Positions 4,181 to 64,000 of a stretch of 64,000 bases of DNA are shown here, in pieces. The stretch spans positions 6,993,731 through 7,057,730 of the forward strand of contig OZ199838.1 in the NCBI GenBank assembly GCA_964304625.1, read 5' to 3'. The stretch's first letter is position 1, and each line of letters opens with the position of its first letter. Below the pieces are notes generated by a model. It saw nothing but the letters and a program-made list of their open reading frames with translations. It had not been told where the DNA came from and searched no databases. The position numbers and the translations under genes are program-made. Origin of the DNA: Kudoa neothunni (taxonomy: Eukaryota > Animalia > Cnidaria).

Positions 4181-5760
4181 TAAAAAACTGCTTGAAGAAT
4201 GTACCGGACAATAAAATTTGTAGCATTTAGAGCACCATATTGTGGTTTTTTATCCCTATTTCGAGGACAAAACTCACATCGTGCGCTTTTTATGCTTGCG
4301 GGTGGTTCCAGATGGGAAATGTTTGCCTTATTGAAGTTACTTTTGGCCGGTACATTGGTAGAATGTTTGGCCAACAACGGTTTATACAGTTGCTCTGTGA
4401 TCTCCTTTAGGAAGGTTTGTCTATTATTCGATTCACTAATATTTCTTTATACAATGCAAAAGCATTCACCAGCGACAAATCGACGATTCTAATGAATACG
4501 ACTAGGTGTCATCTCCTTGTAAATCGATGAACAGAAACCGATGCGAGCATCCTGTCGAAATTATCTATGCCGCCCTTAGTTTTATTATAATCCTATGTTA
4601 ATTGTGGTTTTAACTTAAGGTATTCTCCTGAAACAGAGTTATCATGCGTGTCAGAAATTAGAAGAATCACAGACTTGTCATTTTTGCCACATATGATAAC
4701 AGCATATATTTATCGTAAAACAAAAAAATGATGGAATAAAGAGGTCATTTTCTTGAAGTTTGAAGACAAGATGGTATCTCTTAATTCTTCTCATTGCTCC
4801 CAAAAAAGTCAACTTTCTTTCTAACAATTTATTCGCGAGAGACATCGATGAAAAGAAATTATCAGCGACAATATTACGGCCAGAATCAAACAAATGAATT
4901 GTAAGGTTGAGTACGATGTTTTCACCTACGTTAGTTTGTCTATTCGTCTCAGAATTATTCTTTCCCAAATAAACGCTGGCATTACAAACGTAATTGGCGA
5001 TTGGATCAACCAGTAGACAAAATTATATACCACATTTTGCCGACATCATGGGCATATAATGCCGGAAGGACCATCTTCCCCCAACGGAACCAATTGTTCA
5101 TCGACAGTAACATCCTCGTTCGGAGCAAAACATTTAGGTAGCAAGTCAACCCACTTCTCCCATATATCACGAATGGCACTGAATTGGTCCAACTTTCTAC
5201 GTTCTTCGCGTGTATCATAGTCATCTAAATGCGATGCTTGGGAAATATGTTTGAAGTGCCGAAGTGAAAGTAATCGCCGATAGATTTCTCTTCCTTCCTT
5301 CTGGATGAATAACGCACTTATAGGATCTTCTCTATATTTATGGGTGGCCATGAGGATTAACAATCCTAAATATCCCCTAATTTCTACCAAATCAAGATCG
5401 TACCATCGGTCGTCGGAATGATGCTTTCCAAACATATTTGTAAACAAAATGATATCGTCGCTGATTTCATCATTCAAAAATAATAAAAAACAGTCCAATA
5501 TGTTTTTTATTTTTATTTGAACATATGCAGTGGGTCAAGGGGTTGGATACATTTTATTCTCCGGACCTCTCTTTGTTGGACGAGACTTTAAAGTACTCCA
5601 TTGAATACCATCTTCTCTCGTAAGAACATCAATACCAACGTCGATTATTTTCATTTCGTCTGAAAATTCTTCATCTTCATAAGTGTGACCTCCACGCTCA
5701 CTTTCCGAAGAACAGAATTCATCGTACAAATCATCCGAGCCGCACATTGAAATCAACGTG
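4181..5760 (-). pseudogene. Frameshifted piggyBac (PGBD4-like) transposase
   Basis: ORF fragments carry VTVDEQLVP and GRNIVADNFFSS, plus the C-terminal Cys-rich RCEFCPRNRDKK. Several frameshifts and stops. Confidence 0.9.
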
Positions 5761-24600: not shown

Positions 24601-26428
24601 CCTCGGGAATAAAAATAAAAAAGAAGGTAATTTGGTTAAAACTTTATTATTATAATTTTATCACGTTAAATGTCTCAGCCTCTTCAAAGAAAACCAAGAC
24701 ACGTATGCAAATAAATTTGTTATTCATCAATTGATCAATATATATTTAGCTGCGTCAAAAACTACAAATAAAAATCTACAAACTATCGGCGAGAATGTGA
24801 AATCTAAACCTAAAGTTGATATAAAACCTGCCGTAACACCACAAGCAAAAACTGAAAAAGCACCTCCGAAAAGTGAATTCGCGTCCAATCTCGATGATAT
24901 TCTTGGCGAGATGGATGAACTTACCAACACAAAGCTGCCTCAAAACTACGATTCTGAAACTGATTCTATATCCAATATGTTCGGCGGCGAAGATGAGCAA
25001 CCCGAACCTGATGATAATTTCAATGTTGACGAAGATGAGATTGATAATATAGAAGCTGCCCTTGATGATTTAAAATTAGACGATGAGATTACCGCACCCA
25101 TCGTGGAATCTCTTATTTGTAGAGCTTGCGGAGAAACTATCACCTCAGGTCCTGCTTGCAGAATCGCCAAGGGGGTTTATCATTTAGAACATTTTGCATG
25201 TGTTGAATGTGACGGAAATTTGCTCAACAAACCTTTTTATGAAAGACTCGACAAACTCTATTGTATTAACGATTATATAAAAAAATTCGCCCACCTATGT
25301 GAAGTCTGCAAGGACCCAGTTGTAAACGTATTTGTTAAATTTGTTCGATTAAATTCTTTACTTTTAAAATTTTTGATATGTACAAAATTATTAAATTCTA
25401 ATAGCAAAAGCCTGGTTCCATGTTGTAAACTATCAACTGCTAAGCGGGTCCGTGGGTCCCACGGATAATGGCAAGCTTTAGACTCATCTTATTCAGTTAT
25501 TAATGAATATTTAAATCATAATATACAAAAACAATGAAACAGAGAGGATTATAAATTAAAGTGGCTCGAAACTTTGTTTATGCGATTGTTCATAAACCGA
25601 ACTAGTGTGGCGATAAAAATATTAAAGGAGATAAAAATGTTGAACTTTTGTTAAAAAGGTAAGCTTGTGGAGCTTGCCGTTGGTCCTTTGGCATATATGA
25701 GCTGGTTCAACTTTATATTTTTGTTAACGTAACACTCCTCTTGTAATATTTCTTATATCAATTAATACAACTATTCTAACTAGAAACCATGGTTTTTGTT
25801 AAATGACTGTACACAATTATATCTATAATTAATAATATAGATGAATACATAATATTAAAAATGAATTGAATTTATTTTAGGATATAATTCTCTCATTGGG
25901 ACTATATTATCACATGGAACATTTCAAATGCAGAATATGTGATGGAGTGATTGGAGATAAACCATATCACCTGGTAAACAAGGTGCAGCACTGTGTTCAG
26001 TGTTTCGAACAATTGTATTCAAAAACATGTGAATTATGCCAACAACCCATATCTGGAAACCATGTTAGTGTGAAGGGAAAATTTTGGCATAGCGATTGTT
26101 TTAAATGTGTCGTAAGTTGATCATTAATATATCAAATCATAAATTTCATTATTGATAGACTTGCGAAGGGAAGCTTGAAAATGGCTCCTTCCAATTGTAC
26201 CAAAACAAACTCTATTGTGTTAACGACTATCACAGACTTCAAGGGACAATATGCTTAACCTGTAATCAACCCATTATCGGAAGATGCGTCCAGTCCAAAG
26301 GAAGATACTACCACGCCGAACATTTTGTATGTAATCTGTGCAAGACACCACTTGCATCAAAAGCCTACAAGATTCTCAATGATAGAGAATACTGTACCAA
26401 CTGCTTTGATATCAGCTACACAGAATAA
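21690..26428 (+). CDS. Paxillin/leupaxin-family focal adhesion protein (LD motifs plus four LIM domains), multi-exon
   Basis: LD-like motifs DVDSLLEE, NLDDILGEM and IEAALDDL. Four tandem C-terminal LIM domains (for example CRAC...YHLEHFACVEC...YCINDY and YHAEHFVCNLC...YCTNCF). GT-AG introns. The 5' exon assignment is less certain. Confidence 0.85.
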
Positions 26429-49400: not shown

Positions 49401-50268
49401 CTCGTCTACTGAATCTTAACATTGAATTATCTTATATTTCTCAGAAAAGCTTTGGTAATTTCGCGGTTAAATAAAATCTATTTAACCGCGATAGTGCACG
49501 AAGCATGCAAAGTGTACTTTCAGGTACAATTCCATTACGTAAGATCTATATTTTTTATTTATATCATAATTAAGGGTATTCCCTTTATTATAAGTAAGAA
49601 TTAGAAAATTCAAATTTAGTTTTGTGTAAAAAAATGGAGATTACGTACGAGCCCTGTTGCATTGTATACCAAAAAATTATATTAACTAAACATTATATTT
49701 TCACAAGATAATTTATAGTCAAATTCCTATTTCACATATTGAGCTACGAATAAATTAATTTTTTCAGTTTGGAAAGTATACCATCATTATATAGAACTCG
49801 TAAACTCACTTTTTGGTCAAATAGTTTTGCAACAAAATAGTGTCAATGAATGTAAGTAAAAAATTTGGCAAAATATATGAAGAATAAGGACATTCAAAAG
49901 TTTTTGTAAATTAACGAGAGATTACACATGGGAGCGATTTTTCTCGAAATTAGAGTTACTTAAAATTACGAAATAATTTGTTGAGACTGGATTTTCACCC
50001 TTCGTGTTTATATTTTTTATTAAAAAGAATCATAAAATAAGGAAATGCGCGAAAGAGTGTCTATAAATTGCCACAGACTCCATAATAACCAAAAATTAAT
50101 ACATTTCAAATTTTATGTAAAATTTAGTTTGTTAAACATAAAGTGAAGTATAAAATATAAGTGAAATACATGCCATATTTCTGGAAAAATATCGTCGAAG
50201 ATATCCATTTCCTTTGATAACATAAAAATTATTTGTTTTTGATATTCGAATACATTAAAAAAACTTCC

Positions 50269-50354
50269 TGTTAATGCCACCATAAACGCTCATTTTATAA
50301 ACTACTGAAACACGTAACTATGCATATGGATTAAAGTATATCTAGAACTTAACA
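50269..50354 (-). repeat. 3' LTR (86 bp)
   Basis: Direct repeat of 54098-54183 with TG...CA ends, adjacent to the PPT. Confidence 0.95.
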
Positions 50355-50366
50355 CTTTTCCCCTTC
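50355..50366 (-). other. Polypurine tract
   Basis: GAAGGGGAAAAG on the minus strand immediately before the 3' LTR. Confidence 0.9.
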
Positions 50367-50378
50367 AATTTTTTGGCT

Positions 50379-53300
50379 TTATAGGTTGATAAAAGGATCC
50401 AATAATTTCTCATTCCTAGCCTTGTATGGTTTCATTTTATCAAAATTTGTGACGAATTGCTTTCCATTTTTTTCGAGGCGATAAGTAGAATTTGTTATTC
50501 TCTGCTTCACTGTATACGGCCCGTCGAAAAATGGATCGAGTTTATTTTTCCTGACTGGAATTTGGACCCATACCATTTCCCCAGGTTTGTAAGGATTTCC
50601 ATAGGCTTTCTTGTTGTATCGGTTTTTCGTTTTTTCCAGTGACAGCTCCATATTCTCTTTTGCCAAATTGTATGCCATCGTAAGATTTGATTTTAAATTT
50701 TTTACATAACCGTCAAGCGTTTGCAAGGTACTTCCAGTTTCAAAAACAATTTCGATCGCCGATTTAACCTCTCGTCCCATCATAAGGAAATTTGGAGAAT
50801 ACTTCGAAGAACTATGAGGCGCCGAACGATACGCCATCATAACCAACGGTAGCAAAGAATCCCATTCCGCATGTCGATCAACAACCTTGCTTAACATATC
50901 AATTATGGTACGATTCAGTCTCTCTACCATGCCGTCTGACTTAGGATTGTATGGGCATGTACGCGTCTTTCTTATTCCAAGCAGTTCACATGTTTGCTTA
51001 AAAATTGCAGACTCAAAATTGCTCCCTTGGTCGCTGTGAAGTGTATGAGGAAGTCCAAATCTACTAAACACATGCTTTACCAGTTTTTGTGATATCGTCA
51101 TGGTTTCTTGGTTTTTGATGGCAAACGCTTCTGCCCATTTAGTGAAGTAATCCTGAATAACTACAATATAGCGATTCCCATTATTAGTCACTCGGAGCGG
51201 TCCAACAACATCAATAGCTACTCTTTGCATAGGATAGCTACACACTTCCGTATTCAACTCAGAAACAAATTTTTTTGTTTGTCGATTCCTCGCAGCGCAC
51301 TTTGGACACGATTCACACCAATTCTTCACATCCTTCTTTTGAAATGGCCAGTAAAAATTTCGAGATACGAATTCATTCACTTTGTTGTGCCCCAAGTGTC
51401 CCGAAGTACTGCTATCATGAGCAATTTTCAAAACTTCTTTTTTCAGTCTGTCTGGTACAATCAATCTAAGTCTAGTCTCCATTGTGGTGTCGTTTCTGAA
51501 AACTCGATAGAGTATATCATTTTCGATTTTCAACATTGATCTCAACTTCCATAAAATTCTAATTTGGTCGCTCCGCTCTTTTGGTTCCACAAGAGGCATT
51601 CTATTCGTCTTCATCCAACCAATAATTTGGGATACATTTGGATCAGCCATCTGAACTCTTCGAATCAGCTCGTCAGGGAACCCCTTTACTTCGACCGCAT
51701 TGCAATTCTTTGGATTCGGAATTCGAGACAATGCATCGGCGTTCGCATGATCTTTCCCTGGTCTGTGGATTACCTCAAATTCGTACTCCGCCAAAATCTC
51801 CAACCATCTTGCAACTTGTCCTTCTGGGTTTCTGAAAGACAACAACCATTTTAAGGCGTTATGGTCGATACGAATTATGAATTTCTTTCCAGCAAGATAA
51901 TTCTTAAAAAATTTCACAAAATGCACCAGAGCCAACAATTCTTTCCGGGTCGCACAATAATTTCTTTCTCTTTGAAGTAAATTGCGACTTCCAAATGATA
52001 TTACCTTCTCTGTACCATTTATCATTTGAGACAGTACACCACCAATTGCAAGGTTACTAGCGTCTGTATCCAAAATGAATGTCTTTTCCCAATCTGGGTT
52101 GGTTAAGACCGTTGGAGACGTGATTTCCTTCTTGATTGTATTGAAGCTGATCTCACAGTCAATAGACCAGTTCCAGGGAACATCCTTTTTGAGCAATTCA
52201 TAAAGAGGGGCAGAAATTTCAGAAAATTTTTTTACAAATCTGCGATAGTAGTTGGCAAGTCCTAGGAATTTTTGAACATCCTTAACATTATTGGGAGTTG
52301 GCCACTCATTGATAACTTGAGTTTTAGACGGATCAGGGGTTATCCCCTTTTCACCAATGACGTGACCAAGAAAGTGGACCTCCTTCTTATAGAATACTGA
52401 TTTGTTTTCGTTAATTTTCAATTTTTTATCTCCCAAAACCTTCAATATCTTCTTGACGTCATCGATATGTTGATTATAGTTTTTACTAAATATTATAACG
52501 TCATCAAGATAGACCAAACATATCTTCCCAATAAAATTCTTCAAAACCGAGTTCATCATGCGTTGAAACGTGGCCGGTGCATTGCAAAGTCCGAAGGGCA
52601 TACGTTTGAATTGGTATATCTCATCAGTACCATAGAATGCTGTTTTTTCCTTATCATTTTCATCAATCAGCACCTGATGGTAGCCATCTTTGAGATCCAG
52701 AACTGAGAAGTACCTTGAACCTCCCAACATATCAAAGATATCATCTATTCTAGGCAATGGATAGGAATCCTTAATCGTTATTGCATTTAGCTTTCGGTAA
52801 TCCACACAGAGCCTAAACTTCCCGGATTTCTTTGGGACAATAACCGCATTCGAAGCCCATTCTGAGCACGACTTTTCAATAACATCATTTTCAACGAGTT
52901 CTCTAATCAACTCGTTCATTATATTTCGCTTGTGAAATGGAATTCTACGTCTTTGGTCTCTTATCGGCACTCTTGTCCCAGTATCAATATAATGATAAAT
53001 TGGCTTCTCAATTTCATCATCCTTCTTGGTGGAAATATTCGCAACCATTAAAGACTCAGAGTTAGCTTTCAATTCCAGCGTCTTTTCTCCAATTTTCACA
53101 GTCAATCCAAGTCTGTTCATCACATCGACTCCAATGATACAATCGTGTATGACATTTTCTATTACATAAAACTTATGGTTTATGCTTTTCCCTTCAACAT
53201 TTATAGGTAACACAGTAATACCCTTAACTTCCATTTCTCCACCACATGCAGATATAACTTTTTCATGGGTGATTTTAATGTGTTGCTGACCCAACAATAG

Positions 53301-54122
53301 AAATAGTTTGTGGTTTATAATACTAAGTTGCGAACCAGTGTCAAATAACGCACCCACCACAATGTTTTTAATTTGTAATTTCAGAAAAAATAGAGAGGCG
53401 TATTTAGAATTACTACACTTGGTCAAATAACAATGTTTTTTTATATGTCCAAGTTTCCCACATCCATAGCATTTAACAGGGGTTTTGATTTTAAATTTGC
53501 TTTCCAATGCATCCAGCCTTTCCAATATCATATCCTCTTTGTTCTTCCTACCAACTGCAAGAACTTCAGGAATCGGTACTTCTGATACACTCACCATTGT
53601 ATTGTTCGCCACAAACTCCAACTTCCTAGCTAGAGTAAGAGCATCTTCGAAAGATACCGGATCCTTAATCATCAAGTTTTTCTGAATTTCTTTACTCCTC
53701 ACACCATGGATGAATTGATTCTTCATCATCTTGTTGATTTGATCCATAGAAACTCCAGTGAGGGTCACAGCCGCTTTTCTACGCAACTCTTCTGCGTATT
53801 CGATAACGTTCATATTATCGGTTTGGACGCACTCGAAGAATTCTCGCTGAGAGATATAGCCATCCTTAATGGAGCCAAATCTACTAAGCAAGAATTGTTT
53901 CATTCCATTATAATCAGATGTCATTGTCCATCCAGACTCTGTCACTATCTTAAATACTATTGGTGACAATGACACTAGTAGTTCCAATGAATGCTTTTCT
54001 GGTGGAATATTTCGATGAACTAACAATAATTCAAATCGAGCACACCATGCCTCTGCATTTTTCCCATCAAACGGTTCGACAGTAGCTACTGCGCCAATGT
54101 TAATGCCACCATAAACGCTCAT
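50379..54122 (-). CDS. Gag-Pol polyprotein, 1247 aa (Gag-CCHC-PR-RT-RNase H-IN)
   Basis: Zinc knuckle CYGCGKLGHIKKHC. Protease LFDTGSQ. RT MPFGLCNAP and YLDD. RNase H TDAS and ADALSR. Integrase HHCC, DDE (IDVVGP, SDQGSNF, GMVER) and GPY. Integrase-last order indicates Ty3/Gypsy. Confidence 0.97.
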   Translation of the reverse strand: MSVYGGINIGAVATVEPFDGKNAEAWCARFELLLVHRNIPPEKHSLELLVSLSPIVFKIVTESGWTMTSDYNGMKQFLLSRFGSIKDGYISQREFFECVQTDNMNVIEYAEELRRKAAVTLTGVSMDQINKMMKNQFIHGVRSKEIQKNLMIKDPVSFEDALTLARKLEFVANNTMVSVSEVPIPEVLAVGRKNKEDMILERLDALESKFKIKTPVKCYGCGKLGHIKKHCYLTKCSNSKYASLFFLKLQIKNIVVGALFDTGSQLSIINHKLFLLLGQQHIKITHEKVISACGGEMEVKGITVLPINVEGKSINHKFYVIENVIHDCIIGVDVMNRLGLTVKIGEKTLELKANSESLMVANISTKKDDEIEKPIYHYIDTGTRVPIRDQRRRIPFHKRNIMNELIRELVENDVIEKSCSEWASNAVIVPKKSGKFRLCVDYRKLNAITIKDSYPLPRIDDIFDMLGGSRYFSVLDLKDGYHQVLIDENDKEKTAFYGTDEIYQFKRMPFGLCNAPATFQRMMNSVLKNFIGKICLVYLDDVIIFSKNYNQHIDDVKKILKVLGDKKLKINENKSVFYKKEVHFLGHVIGEKGITPDPSKTQVINEWPTPNNVKDVQKFLGLANYYRRFVKKFSEISAPLYELLKKDVPWNWSIDCEISFNTIKKEITSPTVLTNPDWEKTFILDTDASNLAIGGVLSQMINGTEKVISFGSRNLLQRERNYCATRKELLALVHFVKFFKNYLAGKKFIIRIDHNALKWLLSFRNPEGQVARWLEILAEYEFEVIHRPGKDHANADALSRIPNPKNCNAVEVKGFPDELIRRVQMADPNVSQIIGWMKTNRMPLVEPKERSDQIRILWKLRSMLKIENDILYRVFRNDTTMETRLRLIVPDRLKKEVLKIAHDSSTSGHLGHNKVNEFVSRNFYWPFQKKDVKNWCESCPKCAARNRQTKKFVSELNTEVCSYPMQRVAIDVVGPLRVTNNGNRYIVVIQDYFTKWAEAFAIKNQETMTISQKLVKHVFSRFGLPHTLHSDQGSNFESAIFKQTCELLGIRKTRTCPYNPKSDGMVERLNRTIIDMLSKVVDRHAEWDSLLPLVMMAYRSAPHSSSKYSPNFLMMGREVKSAIEIVFETGSTLQTLDGYVKNLKSNLTMAYNLAKENMELSLEKTKNRYNKKAYGNPYKPGEMVWVQIPVRKNKLDPFFDGPYTVKQRITNSTYRLEKNGKQFVTNFDKMKPYKARNEKLLDPFINL
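54086..54096 (-). other. Primer-binding site, inside the gag coding sequence
   Basis: TGGCGCAGTAG one base after the 5' LTR. TGG pairs with the tRNA CCA end. A Ser-type tRNA is the best guess and is unverified. Confidence 0.75.
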
Positions 54123-54183
54123 TTTATAAACTACTGAAACACGTGACTATGCATATGGATTAAAGTATATCTAGAACTTAACA
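54098..54183 (-). repeat. 5' LTR (86 bp), contains the gag-pol ATG
   Basis: Direct repeat of 50269-50354. The ATG at 54122-54120 lies inside it. Confidence 0.95.
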
Positions 54184-54275
54184 CTTCCCAAAATAATTTT
54201 GTCCCAAATGTCGCTCGTAATTTTAAGTATTTTTATTTAAACTTAATACTTTTGCTTTGATACTTCCCACGCGTT

Positions 54276-54296: not shown

Positions 54297-57200
54297 ATGA
54301 GAAAATTTTCATGCGTTGCTAGAATTCCACAAAACTTTTGTCTCTATAGGAATTTATGTGATTTTTCGAATGTAAAAAGAGCAGAAAAAATCGTTCTGCC
54401 GAATGTTAAATCATCTTTCAATAGCAGTAGCTTTCACGAGCTTAATTCTTTTGTTTTGAGTAAAATTTAGAGGTTTTGAGCACTGGGGAATGGTTAGATT
54501 TGGAGAATATTAATTTATCGTTTGTATCGAGCAGTGAGTTACATGCGGATAATTCAGATCATCAAATCCGCCCAAATTACGTGTATATTGATGAATTAGA
54601 AATTAACGCTCGATTAAAGATTCCATTGTGCAACAATAAAGTGATTGCAAATTATGTCAATTTATTATTTTATTTTTTCATAAGATTATCAAAGTTTTAT
54701 CGTATTTGAGGATATTATGGCTCAATAATAAAATTGATCTTATCGAAGAAAATGTGGTGAGATATATGCTGGTAGTGCTATATCAGAAAAGTCGGTTTCT
54801 GAATGATCCAATATTGTTAAAAAAATTGTTACTTGAGAATCAAGATCTCCTTAACCACAACGGTAACGACAGTACAATTTCTGTGTTGAATTTGGTGCAA
54901 CCGAAAAATCTTCTTCACACACTATCAGATGTGATCGATTGTTGAAAACTTTATTTTTAATGTCATTTTATAGTTTCTGGCTTTGGATTGGAATGGAAAA
55001 CGCAGATTCACTCCAAGTGCTAGCCAGTATGTTGATTTATTGGTTAAAAGATTGGCAGCAATCAATAAATTATGCGACAACGAAAAATTAACAACCTCTC
55101 CAATTATTGATAATATTCCTGAAATTGGCCAAAAATACTATGATAAGTATTGGTTTTCACCCTGCAAAACTACCATATCTTCAGATATTGAACAACTATA
55201 CAAGACTCAATTTGATACAGAAAAAAACTGTATTGATTGACTTACTTAATGCCAAAACGAAAGATAACTTTTATTTTTGTTAATAGATATGGTCAGTATT
55301 CCTATATGGAATAATACTAGAGATGAAGCGTCAAATGCAGCTTCTCCTGATGGGGTTGGTGTTGATAAAGATGATAATTTATATGAAAATCTGCTAAAAG
55401 ATATCACCAACCATCTAGCTCGATCTTTGATAGAATCCAGAAGTAATGTTTTCCAACAATTTTTAATATCGCCCTTTATTTGAGTACATTTATATTATGT
55501 TTTTTGTAATTTTTTAAGTTATCAGACATATACAATTTAAATATTTTCTTATAATTAAAAATGATATTTATTATTAAAAATAATATGGTTATTAGATGAT
55601 TGGAAAAGTCATGCTAAATCATATTATTCTTCATTTTCCGACGCTTTTGATGTCGATGATATCAAACACATTAGTGATTGCACTGTGAAGAGTCTATTTA
55701 TGATGGCGGGCCGATCATTCAATATTATACCCAAATCACATTTCGTTAAATGTATTAAAGGTATAATTCAGCACCGTATAAATTTTAAATGGAATGAAAA
55801 ATTGTTTTGCCATCAACATGTATGTGTACATGCTTGTGAATGTGTAAGCTGTAATTTTTGTAATTAGATGCAGTCAGTCCAATTTCACCTATACGACACT
55901 ATGTACAAACATCCCAAGCTGTGGTATCATCCCAGAGTGATCGCTAAAAATTATATGCTTGATCGTTGGGACTGCATTCCATTTGATCAATCCGAGTTAT
56001 GTTTTGACTCAATGTGTTTCACCAAGGTGACCATTCTTTACTCTCATATATCTCTTAATATGTCATTTTAGTTTGCATTGAAAACCTATGAGCAGCTTAT
56101 TGTCGTGTTGTCAATAAAATTTCCTAACCCTTATTTCTATGTTTCCAATAATAGCTTAACAATCCGCCGGGGGAAAGAATTTATTGACCTAGTGGATAAG
56201 TATCAAAAATATTTGTATTTTCCATATTATAAAGTGCCCATGTTGGTACCCCCAAAACCATTTATTGGTTCATACAGTGGAGGTTATCTGACCAATTTCA
56301 GCAGCTTTATCAATAGCACTGAGAATATTGGTACTGCCAAGTTGTGTTTTGAGAGAGCAAGGGGCGATAAATTATCTATTGTGCTTGATTCCTTAAATGC
56401 TTCTGCTTTTAACGAGCTTCGAATAAACGATTTCGTTCTCGATACTTTGATCTCGTTCGCCAATGATAACGCTGAATATCACAATCTAAATTGGCTGCAA
56501 CAAATGATCCAAATAAATACTTCTACTAAATCTGGTATGTTCTTTTTGCTGAGATGTATCACTTTCAAAGAGCGGGGTTGAGAAGATTTATTAGGGAACA
56601 TTTGGTATTATTTTAGCATACGCTTAATCATTTTTTTAAATCTACGAATTTAACTATAAATTTAATTTGGCCGTATAATAATTGGAGATTAATATTTTTT
56701 AAGATATTTATGTTAATTCTAATAAATTTTATATTTATTAAATAAATATAAAACCTGACGAATCGTTATCGTTTTCCCTGTTTTTTATCTCTAGCACCGA
56801 TTATTTATGTACTTCAGAATATTTTTATTATTTTTAAAATAATTTTCTTTTATCATAAGGAATAGAATATATTTCTCAGTCATAATTTAATTGATGATAA
56901 GAGTGAATGAGAAGAAATATTTTATAAAAATTTGGAAATCTTGTTTTTATAGTTGATTTATAAAAATAATTAAGCGAAGTTCAGTTAAATTATAAATCAT
57001 ATTGCACTTTTAAAATTGGAGCTTATTTGTGAACAACATGTAATTTTTTAAATTTTCATTGATTTTATATGATCTTTTTTTGACCAAAAATTTGGGTTAT
57101 GCCTGAGTTAAATGCCAACTATTAAATTGTAAGAAGGAATTAGTTAATCATATTTATCAATTATAAGGTCTCAAACATCATTTTGGGAGGCTAAAATTAT

Positions 57201-60124
57201 CGGAAATTCAGATTAACATAGAATTAAATGTCTAACAATTTAATTTTAAAGTAATACGACTTCAATGTAAACCTAGGTCGTTTTTGTCCTTTGAAAAATT
57301 AGAAATGCGGAATCGTTATTTTGATGCAGTAATAACCTGATTAAATTATTTATATTGTTTTTTGAAATTATGATTTGAATATGTTTGTATTAAAAAAAGT
57401 AATTAATCACATTTAAATGAAAATTTATTTGATACAAATTGCCTTCCGTTAGTATTCTGGCCAAGATATTTACGTGCTTGATAAATATCTATTCGAGTTA
57501 ATATAACTTGGTTATTTAGAATTATTTTTAAAATATTTGGAGAAAATATGAGGTGACCAAATTAAATAAAAAATATAAAACTGGAAGGATGATAATATTA
57601 ATTTTAATAAAAAGAAACTGTTGAAATTTGGAAAATATAAATTTAAATTACTCTATGAAATATTCTTCTCTTTTTATTGTGAACAAAGTAAAATTAGAAA
57701 GTTTACTTAAAAAAACTTGATTGAAAAATTCAAATAAATGGAAAATGCTCATGTCTAAAATAGTACCTCTTCCAATATCGCGCCTCTTCTGAGATTTGAT
57801 CGTTTGAGTGAAATTAAAAATTTTTTTATTGAATTTATATTTTATCGCTAACTTTGATAACATAATAATAGATGGGGGTGCTGGGACGTCGTCAACAATG
57901 GGAAATCATTACCTTCGAAATATCGTTTCTTTGGGTTGTTATCTCCGGAACAAAACCATATGGTTACCACAATACATGGATTTTCGTGGCCGTTTTTATC
58001 CCCAACCTAATATAATTTCTCATTACGGTGGTGATCTTGAAAGGTCGCTATTGATTTTTGCAAAAAAGAAACTTGTGGGCCCACAAGGTCTTAAACAATT
58101 AAAGATTTATTTTTCTACTCTTATTCATGGCTCTCAACTGCTAACCGAAGATGAACATCTCAAATTCACTGATTCCTGCGTGAACACTATCAAAGAAACA
58201 GCGGAGAATCCCAAGAAAAATCTGTGGTGGGTAAAACAAGACAAAATTTTCCAAATTCTTGCCGTGTGCAATGAAATCTACCAAACATTAAACAATATTG
58301 ACAGCTACATGTCAGGGTTTCCTATTTATATCGATGCAACTTGTAGTTCGTTCCAACATGTGGCAGCTCTCACTCGGGATCCAAAATTAGCTGAGTAATG
58401 TCAATAACCGGTTTGCACTACCCCTTATATTTATTTTGATTGTGTTTTAGGCTGACTAATTTGTGTGGTGGTTCTAATCGACAAGATCTATATATTGAGT
58501 TCTGTAAAATGCTCGGTAACTATCATCCCGGTAATTTTAATATTCCTGCTCCAGTTTAATTCTTAAGCGTCTGAACGCAATTTTTCTTATACTCTTTAAA
58601 TTCAACTTTGGTAATTGCCCTCTTTTTGGAAAAGTTCCCCGGGAACACGTACCATTTAAATAAAGTCATTTTTATTTCAGTCTAATTTTGCTGTATAATG
58701 AATTACTAATTGTCTCATTCTTTTGTATTGATAGCGCGTTATATTCAATTTACTTTTGTTATAATATGAATTGACTTGTTCATATGGCGTATTTATTTTA
58801 AAATTATAGAAACCACAATGAAGGATTTATATTTTCTAATATATTTTGTGTATGTTTATTTTTTTAATCATTATTTTATTATGTTAGATTTTTTATTACG
58901 CATTAATTAATTTTATCACTCCACCAAAAATAACGTATAGAATCTATTGTTGCTAATATTTTTAATTTAAATAAATCTTATTCTTAGAAAGATTGATTTT
59001 TATTATTTATTTAATTAATTAATTTTTGTTATTAGTCCATTATTGGAATTACTTTGAGTATTCCAAAAATTGTTGTTTCTTCCGACTCACATTTCTTGTG
59101 TTTCTTATTGATAAAGTCGATTGTATTAGTTTAATCTTAAATGATTTCTAATAAAATAATACGCTCATTTATTTAATGTTAAATCAACTCGTGTTATTTC
59201 TTGTCTCATTGTCGCAGAAATTACCAACCTAAAGTCAATTCTATGATCTAACACTTCTGTATAGTCATTTTTTAATCTCCTCAATATATTAATGTATTTA
59301 TTAAATGTTGCATCTTTGTTTGTACTATAAATAATCTGATGTAGCTTTCTCGAATCATTAAAAACAATAAAATTTCGATCACATTAAGAACTGACAGCCC
59401 ATGTTGATAGTGTTCATGGAAATAAAAATGACAAATTTCTTGTAAATAAATATATATCCAAGTTCAATTGACAATAAAATTTAAAATTGAATTTTCTGTC
59501 ACATTTTAAATTTGTTATTTTATTTTTTCAATAATTTCAAATGCATTATTTATCGCTAGGACAAATCATATCTCAGATTTAATTCAAAAGAATGTTTAAC
59601 GATAAACGTACAATATGTAATAGCGCGATAATCATTTTTAATAGTGTATACATTATTTCTTAAAATAATTTCGATTTGTGGTTTCTGTTTTGGTTACATT
59701 TAAAAATAATGGTTTAGATCTCGTCGTGGATAGAAAACTTTCAAAATTATGTCTTATAACATTTCTCTATGGAAACACAAACCTTGCTAGACACAGCCGC
59801 CATAAGTTTGCTATTATCAATACCCAAGGATCAATAACTTTGTATAACGAATCTATTAGACACACTATGTTTACAGAATTCCCATCAATCAAAAATTTAT
59901 ATGTGAGATTTAACTGTTTATTGTATGTGGATAGTTATGATTGGCTTTTTATAAAGATATGGACAAACGATATATGCCGCCGATTCAAAAAACTGGATAA
60001 ACTGATACATTGGGACACCCCCTTCAATATTCCCATATGCTTGTTTGACCGTGAGTACACCAAGATAACTCTATTCTCCAATTACTTTTTCACCGTTGTG
60101 TATCCAAAATACTTCGATGTTACG
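54297..60124 (+). CDS. POLRMT: Mitochondrial T7-type single-subunit RNA polymerase, at least 11 exons, 3' end not found in the window
   Basis: Basic presequence-like N-terminus MRKFSCVARIPQNFCLYR. Phase-consistent GT-AG introns. Motifs MDFRGRFYP, GDLERSLLIF, motif A PIYIDATCSSFQHVAALTRD, QDLY, motif B RKLSKLCLITFLYG, and WDTP. Motif C was not found. Confidence 0.88.
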
Positions 60125-62121: not shown

Positions 62122-64000
62122 CCCTTTCATGCGAAATGTCCACCCTAGTACCAACAAAATTAAACATCCCATAAAAATGCACGTTAAATTTATTTAGATA
62201 ATTTATTGAATTATAGAATTTTATAAAAGTTAATTGTTTGTTTTCAGTAATGGTCGATTATGTAAACTAAGAGATCTAGCATTTATAGTAAGTTTAATAG
62301 TAATCCTTACATAAAATCAACAAGGAATACAAGAAATTCACATTTATACACATGCAGCCAATTTTTTCCTATCAAAAAAAAATTAAAATTACGAAACGTT
62401 AAAACGTTGTTTAATGCGCTATATTTCATAAGATATATAGCAACCTATCAAAAGATAATGACTGCTCAACACGTGGGTACTAGGATGGACATTTGACATT
62501 CGTGGATCTCCGGATTTCTAATACATGGATCACGATTTGGTTTTTAAATGTTCAACAGAGGGAAATACGACAACTAAAATTGTGGTAATTTCTGATGCCG
62601 ATATTTCTGATCCAGAAGAATACGTTTAAGATTTTGGAACACAGAATCTCGAACGAAGGGTGCTTGAAGCGTACACCGAAAATAATCAAGATTCAGACTG
62701 TTCTGATGAGGAAGTTGTACCAACCTTTAAGTGGAATGTAAGTGAAACCTTTGCAAATATGCCAAATAATTCGGAGACTGTAGATATTGTTTTTAGTGAA
62801 GTTACCGATAGATTATATCAACTTCTTTTTCAATGAAGATCTGATTCTGTTAATTATTGAACAAACAAATTTATATTCGGTTCAGCAAAATTCTAGTTTT
62901 CAAGTTGGTAAAGAAGATAAAAAGTTGATAGGAACGTTGATTATCATGGGAGTTGTTAAAATACCGAGATATCGTTGCTATTGGTCTAAAACTCTAAATT
63001 ACCTACCTGTTTCTGAGTTTATGTCGAGAACCCACTTCGAAGGTATTTCAAAATATTTACACTTCACTGATAATTCAAAAATTATCACAAGTCCGAATTC
63101 TTCAGAATATGATAAATTTGCAAAGATTCGACCGGTTTTGGATTCGATTAGAACAAATTGTTTGAAAGTTGAATGTGGACGAAAGAATTCAATTGACAAA
63201 CAAATTATTCCATTCAAAGGTGGGTGTAAAGCGAAACAATATGCTCCGAATAAACCGACGAAATGGGGATTTTAAATGTTCGTGAGGTGTGGAGTTAAGG
63301 GACTAGTGCAGGATTTTTATCTGATGATGCGAAAAAACCTGATGTGGTTAAAGTTGTGCGAGAGTTTTCCCTTGTCCAAAACATATTTTGTCAACTTCGA
63401 CAACTGGTTTACATCCATTCCCTTTCAAATTTTATTAAAAAAAGGAGCATTTACTCGGGGGAACCATTCGCAAGAATAGAGCAAAGGGATGTCCATTACA
63501 GAATCAGACTGATTTGAAAACTCAGGGGCATTCGAGAGTGTGCACGACTCTAATAATAATATTTCCATAAAGCGTTGGTTTGATGGATCTGTTGTAACTC
63601 TCTCATCTACCCATTCTTCAAACCAACCGATTAAAATGGCGAAAAGATTTGACCGCTCCAAAAAATCATGATTGACATTCCGTGTCCTGCAGATGTAGAC
63701 GAATATAACCAAAATATGGGAGAAGTGGACCTTTCAGATATGTTGATGTCGCTCTACATAACGAAACATAAATGTAAGAAATATAACATGCGAATTTTCT
63801 TCTGCACCCTCAGTACATGTATTATAAATGCGTGATTATTACACACACGAAAATGAAATATTCAAAAAATTTCTAAGAGAGATAGACTGGACTTGATGAA
63901 TTTTTCATTGAAAATAAGCGAAAGTCTTCGTTATTACCAAATAGCAAGTGCTCCCAAAAAACGTGGTAGACCGTCTCTTAATAATTCTTTGGAAAAAATT
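62122..64000 (+). mobile_element. Decayed piggyBac (PGBD3-like) running off the window end
   Basis: TTAA|ccctt start. Internal inverted repeat aatgtccaccctagtacc versus ggtactaggatggacatt at about 62477. Transposase fragments KIRPVLD, SIDKQIIPFKG..KQYAPNKPTKWGF, FDNWFTS and YNQNMGEVD with frameshifts. Confidence 0.9.

What the first reader, a model, noticed from the sequence alone, without database searches (positions are those of the whole stretch)
50269..54183. Minimal intact Gypsy retrotransposon: 86-bp LTRs, about 96% coding, start codon inside the LTR, PBS translated
Seen: the element is 3915 bp, of which 3744 bp is one ORF. The ATG is at position 62 of the 86-bp 5' LTR, so the first codons (MSVYGGIN) are LTR sequence and the PBS encodes IGAV. 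Only 24 bp, including the PPT, separate the stop from the 3' LTR. The gag-like segment VEPFDG..W..RFE follows at once and the next Met is about 66 codons later, which supports the LTR ATG. Known: autonomous Gypsy elements usually have LTRs of hundreds of bp and an internal leader after the PBS, although very short LTRs occur in Mag-type elements and TRIM/SMART derivatives. Inference: U5, the integrase att end and the PBS are all dual-coding, and at most 61 bp remain for U3, R and the 5' UTR. This is close to a minimal autonomous LTR element.
Basis: partly seen in the sequence, partly recalled or inferred. Interest (0 to 1): 0.85.

Follow-up and report, generated by a model that had tools for sequence, protein, structure and literature searches.

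The report
Ultra-compact Gypsy retrotransposon, 86-bp LTRs
This is a real, apparently intact 3.9-kb jumping gene of the Gypsy type in a myxozoan fish parasite, with repeat ends of only 86 bases and a protein-coding frame that starts inside the repeat and reads through the primer-binding site; several related families in this genome and a few outside contigs share the layout, which suggests how small a retrovirus-like element can get.

Summary
A minus-strand LTR retrotransposon lies at window 50269-54183. It has 86-bp LTRs (85/86 identical), TG..CA ends and a 5-bp target duplication. One 1247-aa gag-PR-RT-RNaseH-IN frame starts at LTR position 62. The PBS is translated, and 24 nt including the PPT precede the 3' LTR. 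The genome holds a second intact copy, two decayed or deleted copies and about 18 further LTR matches outside two-LTR elements. All of these are about 86 bp; the four I could read are solo LTRs, three with a 5-bp duplication. The short LTR is therefore the working LTR, not a deletion product.

The in-LTR ATG is not peculiar to this family. Four other families in this genome (LTRs 99-173 bp) and an outside relative (190 bp) keep an in-frame ATG 19-28 nt before the LTR end and read through the PBS. The primer is tRNA-Ser(AGA): 9 nt match here, 11-13 nt in sister families, 18 nt in a distant relative.

Nearest non-myxozoan relatives are conventional, for example 6.2 kb with 779-bp LTRs. Precedents exist (Ty1's PBS lies in GAG; Mag-lineage elements are small), so I call it a new variant of a known kind.

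No RNA evidence was obtainable, so the transcript and translation starts are inferred. Three first-stage notes flag similar compact Gypsy elements elsewhere in this genome.

The parts
50264..50268 (.). Target-site duplication (CTTCC on + strand), 3' side of the element
   Evidence: Identical 5-mer at both flanks
50269..50354 (-). 3' LTR, 86 bp, TG..CA ends
   Evidence: Direct repeat 85/86 identical to 54098-54183
50355..50378 (-). 24-nt non-coding spacer between the stop codon and the 3' LTR. Its last 12 nt (50355-50366) are the polypurine tract GAAGGGGAAAAG
   Evidence: Sequence read directly. A PPT of the same type abuts the 3' LTR in sister families
50379..54122 (-). Single gag-pol ORF, 1247 aa plus stop
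53598..54074 (-). Gag capsid-like helical domain (aa 17-175)
   Evidence: AlphaFold model is helical over residues 23-175. Best Foldseek matches are dArc1, PNMA2, MOAP1, PEG10, Ty3, MLV and HIV capsids, with weak E-values (1e-3 and above) but a consistent fold class. The gag profile finds 2490 homologues
53430..53471 (-). CCHC zinc knuckle (aa 218-231, CYGCGKLGHIKKHC)
   Evidence: Motif in the translation
53100..53393 (-). Aspartic protease (aa 244-341, DTG at 261)
   Evidence: Pfam Asp_protease_2, RVP and related families
52356..52838 (-). Reverse transcriptase (aa 429-589, YLDD at 538)
   Evidence: Pfam RVT_1, E 3e-38
51783..52169 (-). RNase H (aa 652-780)
   Evidence: Pfam RT_RNaseH and RT_RNaseH_2
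50943..51458 (-). Integrase: H2C2 zinc domain (aa 889-947) and catalytic core (aa 964-1060)
   Evidence: Pfam Integrase_H2C2, E 6e-18; rve, E 1e-14
54088..54096 (-). Primer-binding site TGGCGCAGT, one nt after the 5' LTR, inside the ORF (codons I-G-A-V). It is complementary to the 3' end plus CCA of tRNA-Ser(AGA)
   Evidence: 9-nt match to the tRNA-Ser(AGA) gene at L061, the best of 38 tRNAs. The same PBS matches over 11-13 nt in sister families and 18 nt in L088
54098..54183 (-). 5' LTR, 86 bp. It contains the start codon at 54120-54122 (LTR positions 62-64)
54184..54188 (.). Target-site duplication (CTTCC), 5' side of the element

Best explanation
The stretch is an autonomous, recently active Ty3/Gypsy LTR retrotransposon. 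Its features resemble the Mag lineage. It belongs to an extremely compacted lineage found in this myxozoan (Kudoa-type) genome and in a few outside contigs.

Shown:
- complete LTR-PBS-gag-PR-RT-RH-IN-PPT-LTR anatomy;
- 86-bp LTRs that are the unit actually integrated;
- a conserved in-frame ATG inside the 5' LTR;
- a PBS matching tRNA-Ser(AGA) that lies in the reading frame.

Inferred mechanism:
- Transcription starts within the first ~60 nt of the 5' LTR. My guess is near the CA at LTR 48-49, about 30 nt after a TATA-like stretch at positions 11-20. That would leave U3 of at most ~48 nt and a leader of ~13 nt.
- Translation of one gag-pol polyprotein starts at the AUG at LTR position 62. It reads through the rest of R/U5, the integrase-recognised LTR end and the PBS. 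The first ~13 residues form a disordered tail in front of the capsid domain.
- The polyprotein is cut by its own protease, with no frameshift needed.
- tRNA-Ser(AGA) primes minus-strand synthesis one nt downstream of the LTR.
- The PPT abutting the 3' LTR primes the plus strand.
- Polyadenylation must occur inside the 86-bp 3' LTR downstream of the start site, so R is a few tens of nt at most and may include the start codon.
- Because so little room is left for a promoter, activating sequences may lie downstream in the coding region. My recollection is that Ty1 works this way.
For: - Anatomy and domains.
- Copies: a second intact copy with identical LTRs and its own 5-bp duplication (L002), a decayed copy (L003) and a deletion derivative (L004/L005).
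- LTRs genome-wide: 26 LTR matches, nearly all about 86 bp. Solo LTRs L026 and L028 have perfect 5-bp duplications and L030 has a 4-of-5 match.
- DNA-run depth: flank ~7, interior ~21, LTR bin ~93.
- In-LTR ATG: conserved in frame in families A/B (LTR 118 bp), C (99 bp), D/I/J (166-167 bp), E (173 bp), ours (86 bp) and outside relative L081 (190 bp). It lies 19-28 nt before the LTR end. A/B have a stop directly before it and D/I/J have one a codon further up.
- Gag conservation: 43-46% identical from residue ~17 onward, while the next Met in this element is residue 67.
- Purine at -3 of the ATG in 5 of 6 lineages, read from the sequences.
- PBS: matches tRNA-Ser(AGA) at L061 over 9, 11, 13 or 18 nt depending on the family.
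- Tree: the nine genome rows plus P0001 form one group (SH-like support 100, long stem) apart from 48 other hits.
- Gag model: residues 1-13 disordered, capsid-like fold after that.
- Precedent for a PBS inside GAG: Ty1 (PMC4974528).
Against: - No transcript, translation-start or protein evidence. Three metatranscriptome runs labelled with the same species gave zero reads on the element and its flanks, which is no test.
- The PBS match in this family is only 9 nt before a mismatch.
- The two intact copies differ at 8 synonymous and 14 non-synonymous sites. This does not by itself show selection on the protein.
- The TATA-like and initiator assignments are pattern reading only. A possible relative with a 66-nt LTR (L091) would not fit a TATA-plus-30 model.
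- Mag-lineage membership was not tested against reference sequences.
Confidence: 0.78

Rival explanations
1. The in-LTR ATG is fortuitous. Gag translation starts at a downstream AUG (M67) or at a non-AUG codon, and the LTR end and PBS are an ordinary untranslated leader that happens to be open.
For: No RNA or protein data exist. The region is short, so an open frame of 8-12 codons is not rare by chance. Family A/B has a second Met just after the PBS.
Against: - An in-frame ATG with no intervening stop sits in the same 19-28-nt window in six diverged lineages.
- Conserved gag residues F18, D19, G20, W26 and F30 lie between the PBS and M67, so a start at M67 would delete conserved capsid sequence.
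- The frame is kept through the LTR end although the upstream codons differ in number and sequence.
Confidence: 0.12
2. The element is a shortened, non-autonomous or dead derivative of a conventional Gypsy element with longer LTRs. It is either immobile or moved only by a full-size master.
For: Sister families have longer LTRs (99-190 bp). The closest non-myxozoan relatives are 6 kb with LTRs of hundreds of bp.
Against: - Both intact copies encode every domain in one open frame.
- LTRs are identical or differ at 1 nt.
- Near-identical solo LTRs of exactly 86 bp are flanked by their own 5-bp duplications.
- A whole-genome search found no copy of this family with a longer LTR.
- All relatives in the clade are compact as well.
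Confidence: 0.05
3. The element depends on host transcription. With so little U3 it has no promoter of its own and is expressed only by read-through, or from downstream internal sequences alone, so the LTR serves only as an integration and strand-transfer module.
For: Only 61 nt precede the ATG. A possible relative has only 38 nt (L091). By my recollection Ty1 uses activating sequences inside its coding region.
Against: Replication of an LTR element needs a start site inside the 5' LTR and a poly(A) site downstream of it in the 3' LTR to create R, so pure read-through transcripts would not regenerate LTRs. Families D, E and L089 carry a canonical TATATAAA box 45-60 nt upstream of their ATG.
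Confidence: 0.05

Closest known systems
Mag lineage of Ty3/Gypsy (Bombyx mag; Mag-like elements of mosquitoes, fishes and cnidarians)
   Same: - Small size, short LTRs, frequent single gag-pol ORF.
- PBS for tRNA-Ser or tRNA-Leu and 5-bp target duplications. The Culex table lists 4078-5310-bp intact elements with LTRs of 139-211 bp (PMC3286476).
- Fish Mag elements of about 4.7-4.8 kb with fused gag-pol (PMC11117352).
- The Mag cluster is reported to span cnidarians (PMC2774666).
- From memory, Bombyx mag has 77-bp LTRs. I could not retrieve that paper.
   Different: This element is shorter (3915 bp) than any listed there. Its start codon is inside the LTR and its PBS is coding, features those papers do not report. 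Membership was not tested against reference sequences.
Ty1 of Saccharomyces cerevisiae (Ty1/Copia, Pseudoviridae)
   Same: The PBS lies inside the GAG reading frame (PMC4974528). From my own knowledge, the GAG start codon is in the 5' LTR and promoter elements extend into the coding region.
   Different: Ty1 is in a different superfamily, with IN before RT. It is 5.9 kb with 334-bp LTRs, two ORFs joined by a frameshift, and a tRNA-iMet primer.
Nearest non-myxozoan relatives by pol (arthropod and mollusc elements, e.g. Pieris locus L082)
   Same: 36-44% identical pol, TGTTA..TAACA LTR ends, and a PPT of the same type. In L082 gag already starts only 27 nt after the LTR, directly behind the PBS, so there is almost no internal leader.
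   Different: L082 is 6215 bp with 779-bp LTRs and a separate gag ORF. Its ATG is downstream of the PBS, not in the LTR.
TRIM / SMART miniature LTR elements
   Same: Very short LTRs.
   Different: Those are non-coding and non-autonomous. This element encodes the full machinery.

Membership tests
LTR retrotransposon, Ty3/Gypsy (Metaviridae) order of domains | Paired LTRs with TG..CA ends flanked by a short target-site duplication | tested here: met
   86-bp LTRs, 85/86 identical, TGTTAA..TTAACA, 5-bp duplication
LTR retrotransposon, Ty3/Gypsy (Metaviridae) order of domains | tRNA-complementary PBS next to the 5' LTR and a PPT next to the 3' LTR | tested here: met
   TGGCGCAGT lies 1 nt after the LTR and matches tRNA-Ser(AGA)+CCA over 9 nt here and 11-18 nt in relatives. 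The PPT GAAGGGGAAAAG abuts the 3' LTR
LTR retrotransposon, Ty3/Gypsy (Metaviridae) order of domains | Pol order PR-RT-RNaseH-IN (IN after RT) | tested here: met
   Pfam positions 244-341, 429-589, 652-780 and 889-1060
LTR retrotransposon, Ty3/Gypsy (Metaviridae) order of domains | Gag with a retroviral-type capsid fold and a CCHC knuckle | tested here: met
   Model of moderate confidence (pLDDT 67.6). Top structural matches are all Arc, PNMA, Ty3 or retroviral capsids at weak E-values. CCHC at aa 218-231
Mag lineage | Groups with Mag reference elements in an RT/pol phylogeny | not testable with these tools
   No GyDB or Repbase reference sequences were available. The tree contains only unnamed database hits
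Mag lineage | Structural habit: small element, short LTRs, single gag-pol ORF, tRNA-Ser/Leu PBS, 5-bp duplication | tested here: met
   3915 bp, 86-bp LTRs, one ORF, tRNA-Ser PBS, 5-bp duplication, compared with the table in PMC3286476
Chromoviruses | Chromodomain at the integrase C-terminus | tested here: not met
   No chromodomain hit. The C-terminus gives only weak SH3_Tf2-1 and Integrase_p58_C hits
TRIM/SMART non-autonomous elements | No coding capacity | tested here: not met
   Full 1247-aa polyprotein
Ty1/Copia | IN precedes RT | tested here: not met
   IN follows RT-RNaseH. The resemblance to Ty1 lies only in the layout of the start codon and PBS

The most novel reading that the evidence does not exclude
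This myxozoan clade contains the smallest autonomous LTR retroelements yet described: about 3.9 kb, LTRs of 86 bp or less, and about 96% coding. In them U3 has shrunk to a bare core promoter of under 50 nt, R contains the start codon, and the U5 end, the integrase recognition site and the tRNA primer site are all read as protein. If so, nearly every cis-acting signal of a retrovirus-like genome can be overlaid on coding sequence, and promoter strength must come from inside the coding region.
Probability: 0.35. Interest if true: 0.7.

Novelty: new variant of a known kind. Interest (0 to 1): 0.55.

Why it matters
It sets a practical lower bound on the non-coding sequence an autonomous retrovirus-like element needs. 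Here that is 61 nt ahead of the start codon and 24 nt after the stop, with the LTR end and the primer-binding site doing double duty as codons.

It shows that genome compaction in a parasitic animal extends to its own mobile elements. It also gives a natural series of LTRs (about 190, 173, 167, 118, 99 and 86 bp) in which the shrinking of U3, R and U5 can be studied.

There is a practical warning too. Common LTR finders are, as I recall, often run with a 100-bp minimum LTR length and would then miss these families, so LTR content in myxozoan and other compact genomes may be undercounted.

Tried and rejected
- **RNA evidence.** The only RNA raw-read runs offered (X5-X7) laid no read on the element or its flanks, so expression, start site and poly(A) site could not be mapped.
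- **More genomic copies.** Families E, F and G were seen at their 5' ends only.
- **A longer tRNA match.** A search for a tRNA matching more than 9 nt of this family's PBS found no tRNA.
- **RNA folding.** Folding of the LTR/PBS region was no better than shuffles, z = 0.49.
- **Promoter scan.** The bacterial-type promoter/terminator scan is irrelevant for a eukaryote.
- **Compact outside relatives.** Short outside contigs with long ORFs (P0007, P0105, P0082) were checked as possible compact relatives. They are truncated fragments of conventional elements with an upstream gag frame.
- **Gag word search.** A word-based search of the gag part found only P0001. The exhaustive profile search was needed to reach further.
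- **Literature.** Searches for the Bombyx mag LTR length, the 'shortest LTR' and a start codon within an LTR gave nothing usable.
- **Careful tree.** A careful maximum-likelihood tree did not finish in time, so the tree reported is FastTree only.
- **Selection.** dN/dS between the two intact copies is uninformative, with 22 coding differences.
Full report
**1. What is there**

On the minus strand of the window, 50269-54183 is a complete LTR retrotransposon.

- The two LTRs (50269-50354 and 54098-54183) are 86 bp and differ at one base. They begin TGTTAA and end TTAACA.
- The same 5-mer (CTTCC on the + strand) flanks both ends.
- One open frame runs from 54122 to 50379 (1247 codons plus stop).
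- Pfam finds protease (aa 244-341), reverse transcriptase (429-589, E 3e-38), RNase H (652-780), integrase zinc domain (889-947) and integrase core (964-1060). This is the Ty3/Gypsy order.
- The catalytic motifs DTG, YLDD, DTDAS and the integrase D,D,E are readable in the translation.
- The first 240 residues are gag. A model built on five natural sequences is helical from residue 23 to 175, and residues 1-13 are disordered.
- Its best structural matches are all Arc, PNMA, MOAP1, PEG10, Ty3, MLV and HIV capsids. The E-values are weak (1e-3 and above) but the fold class is consistent.
- A CCHC knuckle sits at aa 218-231.
- A profile of this gag finds 2490 homologues in the representative library.

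**2.

- The ATG is LTR position 62. The nearest in-frame stop upstream is at LTR 35-37.
- The last LTR bases, the single spacer base and the PBS are read as N-I-G-A-V.
- The next Met is residue 67.
- 24 nt, ending in the polypurine tract GAAGGGGAAAAG, separate the stop from the 3' LTR.
- The coding share is 3744 of 3915 nt, or 95.6%.

All claims are confirmed.

**3. The 86-bp LTR is the functional unit**

The genome is about 40 Mb in four contigs. Earlier notes of this scan take it for the myxozoan Kudoa neothunni, and I did not test that.

Copies of the element:
- L002 is a second full copy, 99% identical, with identical LTRs, an intact frame and its own duplication (ATTGA).
- L003 is a decayed copy, 95% identical with many stops.
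- L004/L005 is an internal-deletion derivative.

A search with the LTR alone gives 26 matches:
- 8 belong to those four elements.
- About 11 are near-identical LTRs outside any two-LTR element.
- About 7 are 76-83% identical.
- Nearly all span the same ~86 bases.

Only four of these other LTRs could be read; they are solo LTRs. Two have perfect 5-bp duplications and one has a 4-of-5 match.

Contigs of a public DNA run cover the flanks at depth ~7, the interior at ~21 and the LTR bin at ~93. That run may be the sample from which the assembly was made.

The two intact copies differ at 23 positions, of which 8 are synonymous and 14 non-synonymous. This fits recent insertion but says little about selection.

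**4. The layout is shared by a clade**

The 65-69% DNA matches are other families. I could delimit LTRs in four of them from overlapping loci.

| Family | LTR length |
|---|---|
| A/B | 118 bp |
| C | 99 bp |
| D/I/J | 166-167 bp |
| E (one LTR seen) | 173 bp |

- In every one an ATG in the gag frame lies 19-25 nt before the LTR end. The frame runs through ..AACA, one base and TGGCGCAGTG.. into a conserved F-D-G ... W ... F-D-L gag motif.
- In A/B a stop codon directly precedes that ATG. In D/I/J one lies a codon further up. No other AUG start is available there.
- The best outside protein hit (P0001, 55% identity, from an ENA assembly) sits on a circularly permuted 3.9-kb contig. That contig shows a 190-bp LTR, an ATG 28 nt before its end, and a stop codon that abuts the 3' LTR.
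- More distant gag relatives from another ENA assembly carry the same T-I-G-A-V signature (L087, L088).
- A FastTree of pol places the nine genome rows plus P0001 in one group (support 100, long stem), apart from 48 arthropod, mollusc and metagenomic hits. A more careful tree did not finish.

**5. The primer**

Of the 38 tRNA genes recovered, only tRNA-Ser(AGA) (L061, C1:15103267-15103348) matches the PBS well.

| Element | Length of match to tRNA-Ser(AGA)+CCA |
|---|---|
| This family | 9 nt |
| A/B and E | 11 nt |
| D/I/J | 13 nt |
| L088 | 18 nt, all within its ORF |

tRNA-Ser is also the commonest primer of Mag-lineage elements in Culex (PMC3286476).

**6. Outgroups are conventional**

- The Pieris locus L082 is 6215 bp with 779-bp LTRs and separate gag and pol frames.
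- Its gag ATG lies only 27 nt after the LTR, right behind the PBS.
- So the lack of an internal leader may be older than the myxozoan clade. The step taken in that clade was to move the start upstream across the PBS into the LTR and to shrink the LTR.
- The spider locus L083 is a tandem of 5.9-kb units.

**7. How it probably works**

This section is inference.

- For LTRs to be regenerated, the RNA must start inside the 5' LTR and end inside the 3' LTR downstream of that start.
- Since the ATG at 62 has to be on the mRNA, the start lies in positions 1-61.
- Families D, E and L089 have a canonical TATATAAA box 45-60 nt upstream of their ATG.
- This element has a TATA-like stretch at positions 11-20 and a CA at 48-49. 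That suggests a U3 of about 48 nt, a leader of about 13 nt and an R+U5 of about 38 nt that contains the first eight codons.
- I could not test any of this. The RNA runs offered gave no reads, and folding shows no special structure.

**8. Relation to what is known**

- A PBS inside GAG is established for Ty1 (PMC4974528).
- Small size, short LTRs, a single frame, a tRNA-Ser PBS and 5-bp duplications are the habit of the Mag lineage. In the Culex table the smallest intact element is 4078 bp with 139/143-bp LTRs (PMC3286476). In Tetraodontiformes they are about 4.7-4.8 kb with fused gag-pol (PMC11117352).
- The Mag cluster is said to span cnidarians (PMC2774666).
- A recent preprint notes that Gypsy/DIRS1 is the only retroelement group retained in Myxozoa, but it gives no anatomy (10.64898/2026.02.11.705288).
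- I found no description of a Gypsy element with the start codon in the LTR, and none this small.
- I therefore rate it a new variant of a known kind. I did not test Mag membership against references.

**9. Scan context and limits**

- Three first-stage notes on other pieces of this genome flag similar compact Gypsy elements. They report LTRs of 82 and 100 bp and frames running LTR to LTR. The scan has therefore met this design before on other DNA. Those notes had no follow-up shown.
- I built no consensus and repaired no frame.

Noticed in passing
L091:1-140 (Logan SRR31175925): A diverged relative whose contig begins at TGTTACG and reaches ..ATAACA after only 66 nt. An in-frame ATG sits at nt 39 and the frame reads through A-TGGCGC. 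This may be a 66-bp LTR, shorter than any in this genome. Only one LTR is seen and the copy has a frameshift.
   Followed up: partly
L088:100-260 (ENA ERZ795007): A distant gag relative in which a full 18-nt tRNA-Ser(AGA) PBS lies inside the ORF (..PTIGAVSRIL..). The ATG is about 50 nt upstream of the inferred LTR end. This suggests the coding PBS is old in this lineage.
   Followed up: partly
window 54081-54090 (-): A 10-nt perfect palindrome, AGTAGCTACT, starts where the tRNA match of the PBS ends. It is absent from sister families and could be a dimerisation or hairpin motif, or chance.
   Followed up: no
L015+L025, L016+L023 (families I/J): The frames of 1126-1129 aa end about 400 nt before the 3' LTR, although the elements are about 4.1 kb. 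The integrase C-terminus may be in another frame or lost. In L081 the stop abuts the LTR.
   Followed up: no
window 5046-5498 (-) and 62787-63275 (+): Two ORF fragments matching the piggyBac-type transposase family DDE_Tnp_1_7 (E 9e-19 and 4e-29).
   Followed up: no
window 56078-56581 and 57808-58398 (+): ORF pieces matching the N-terminal and catalytic domains of a single-subunit (mitochondrial-type) RNA polymerase, about 1.9 kb from the element. Probably exons of the host POLRMT gene.
   Followed up: no
window 24731-25468 (+): An ORF with a LIM domain (E 3e-12), probably a host gene.
   Followed up: no
L029, L003, L004: One solo LTR, the decayed copy and the deletion derivative lack matching 5-bp flanks. 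This suggests recombination between insertions or old age.
   Followed up: no
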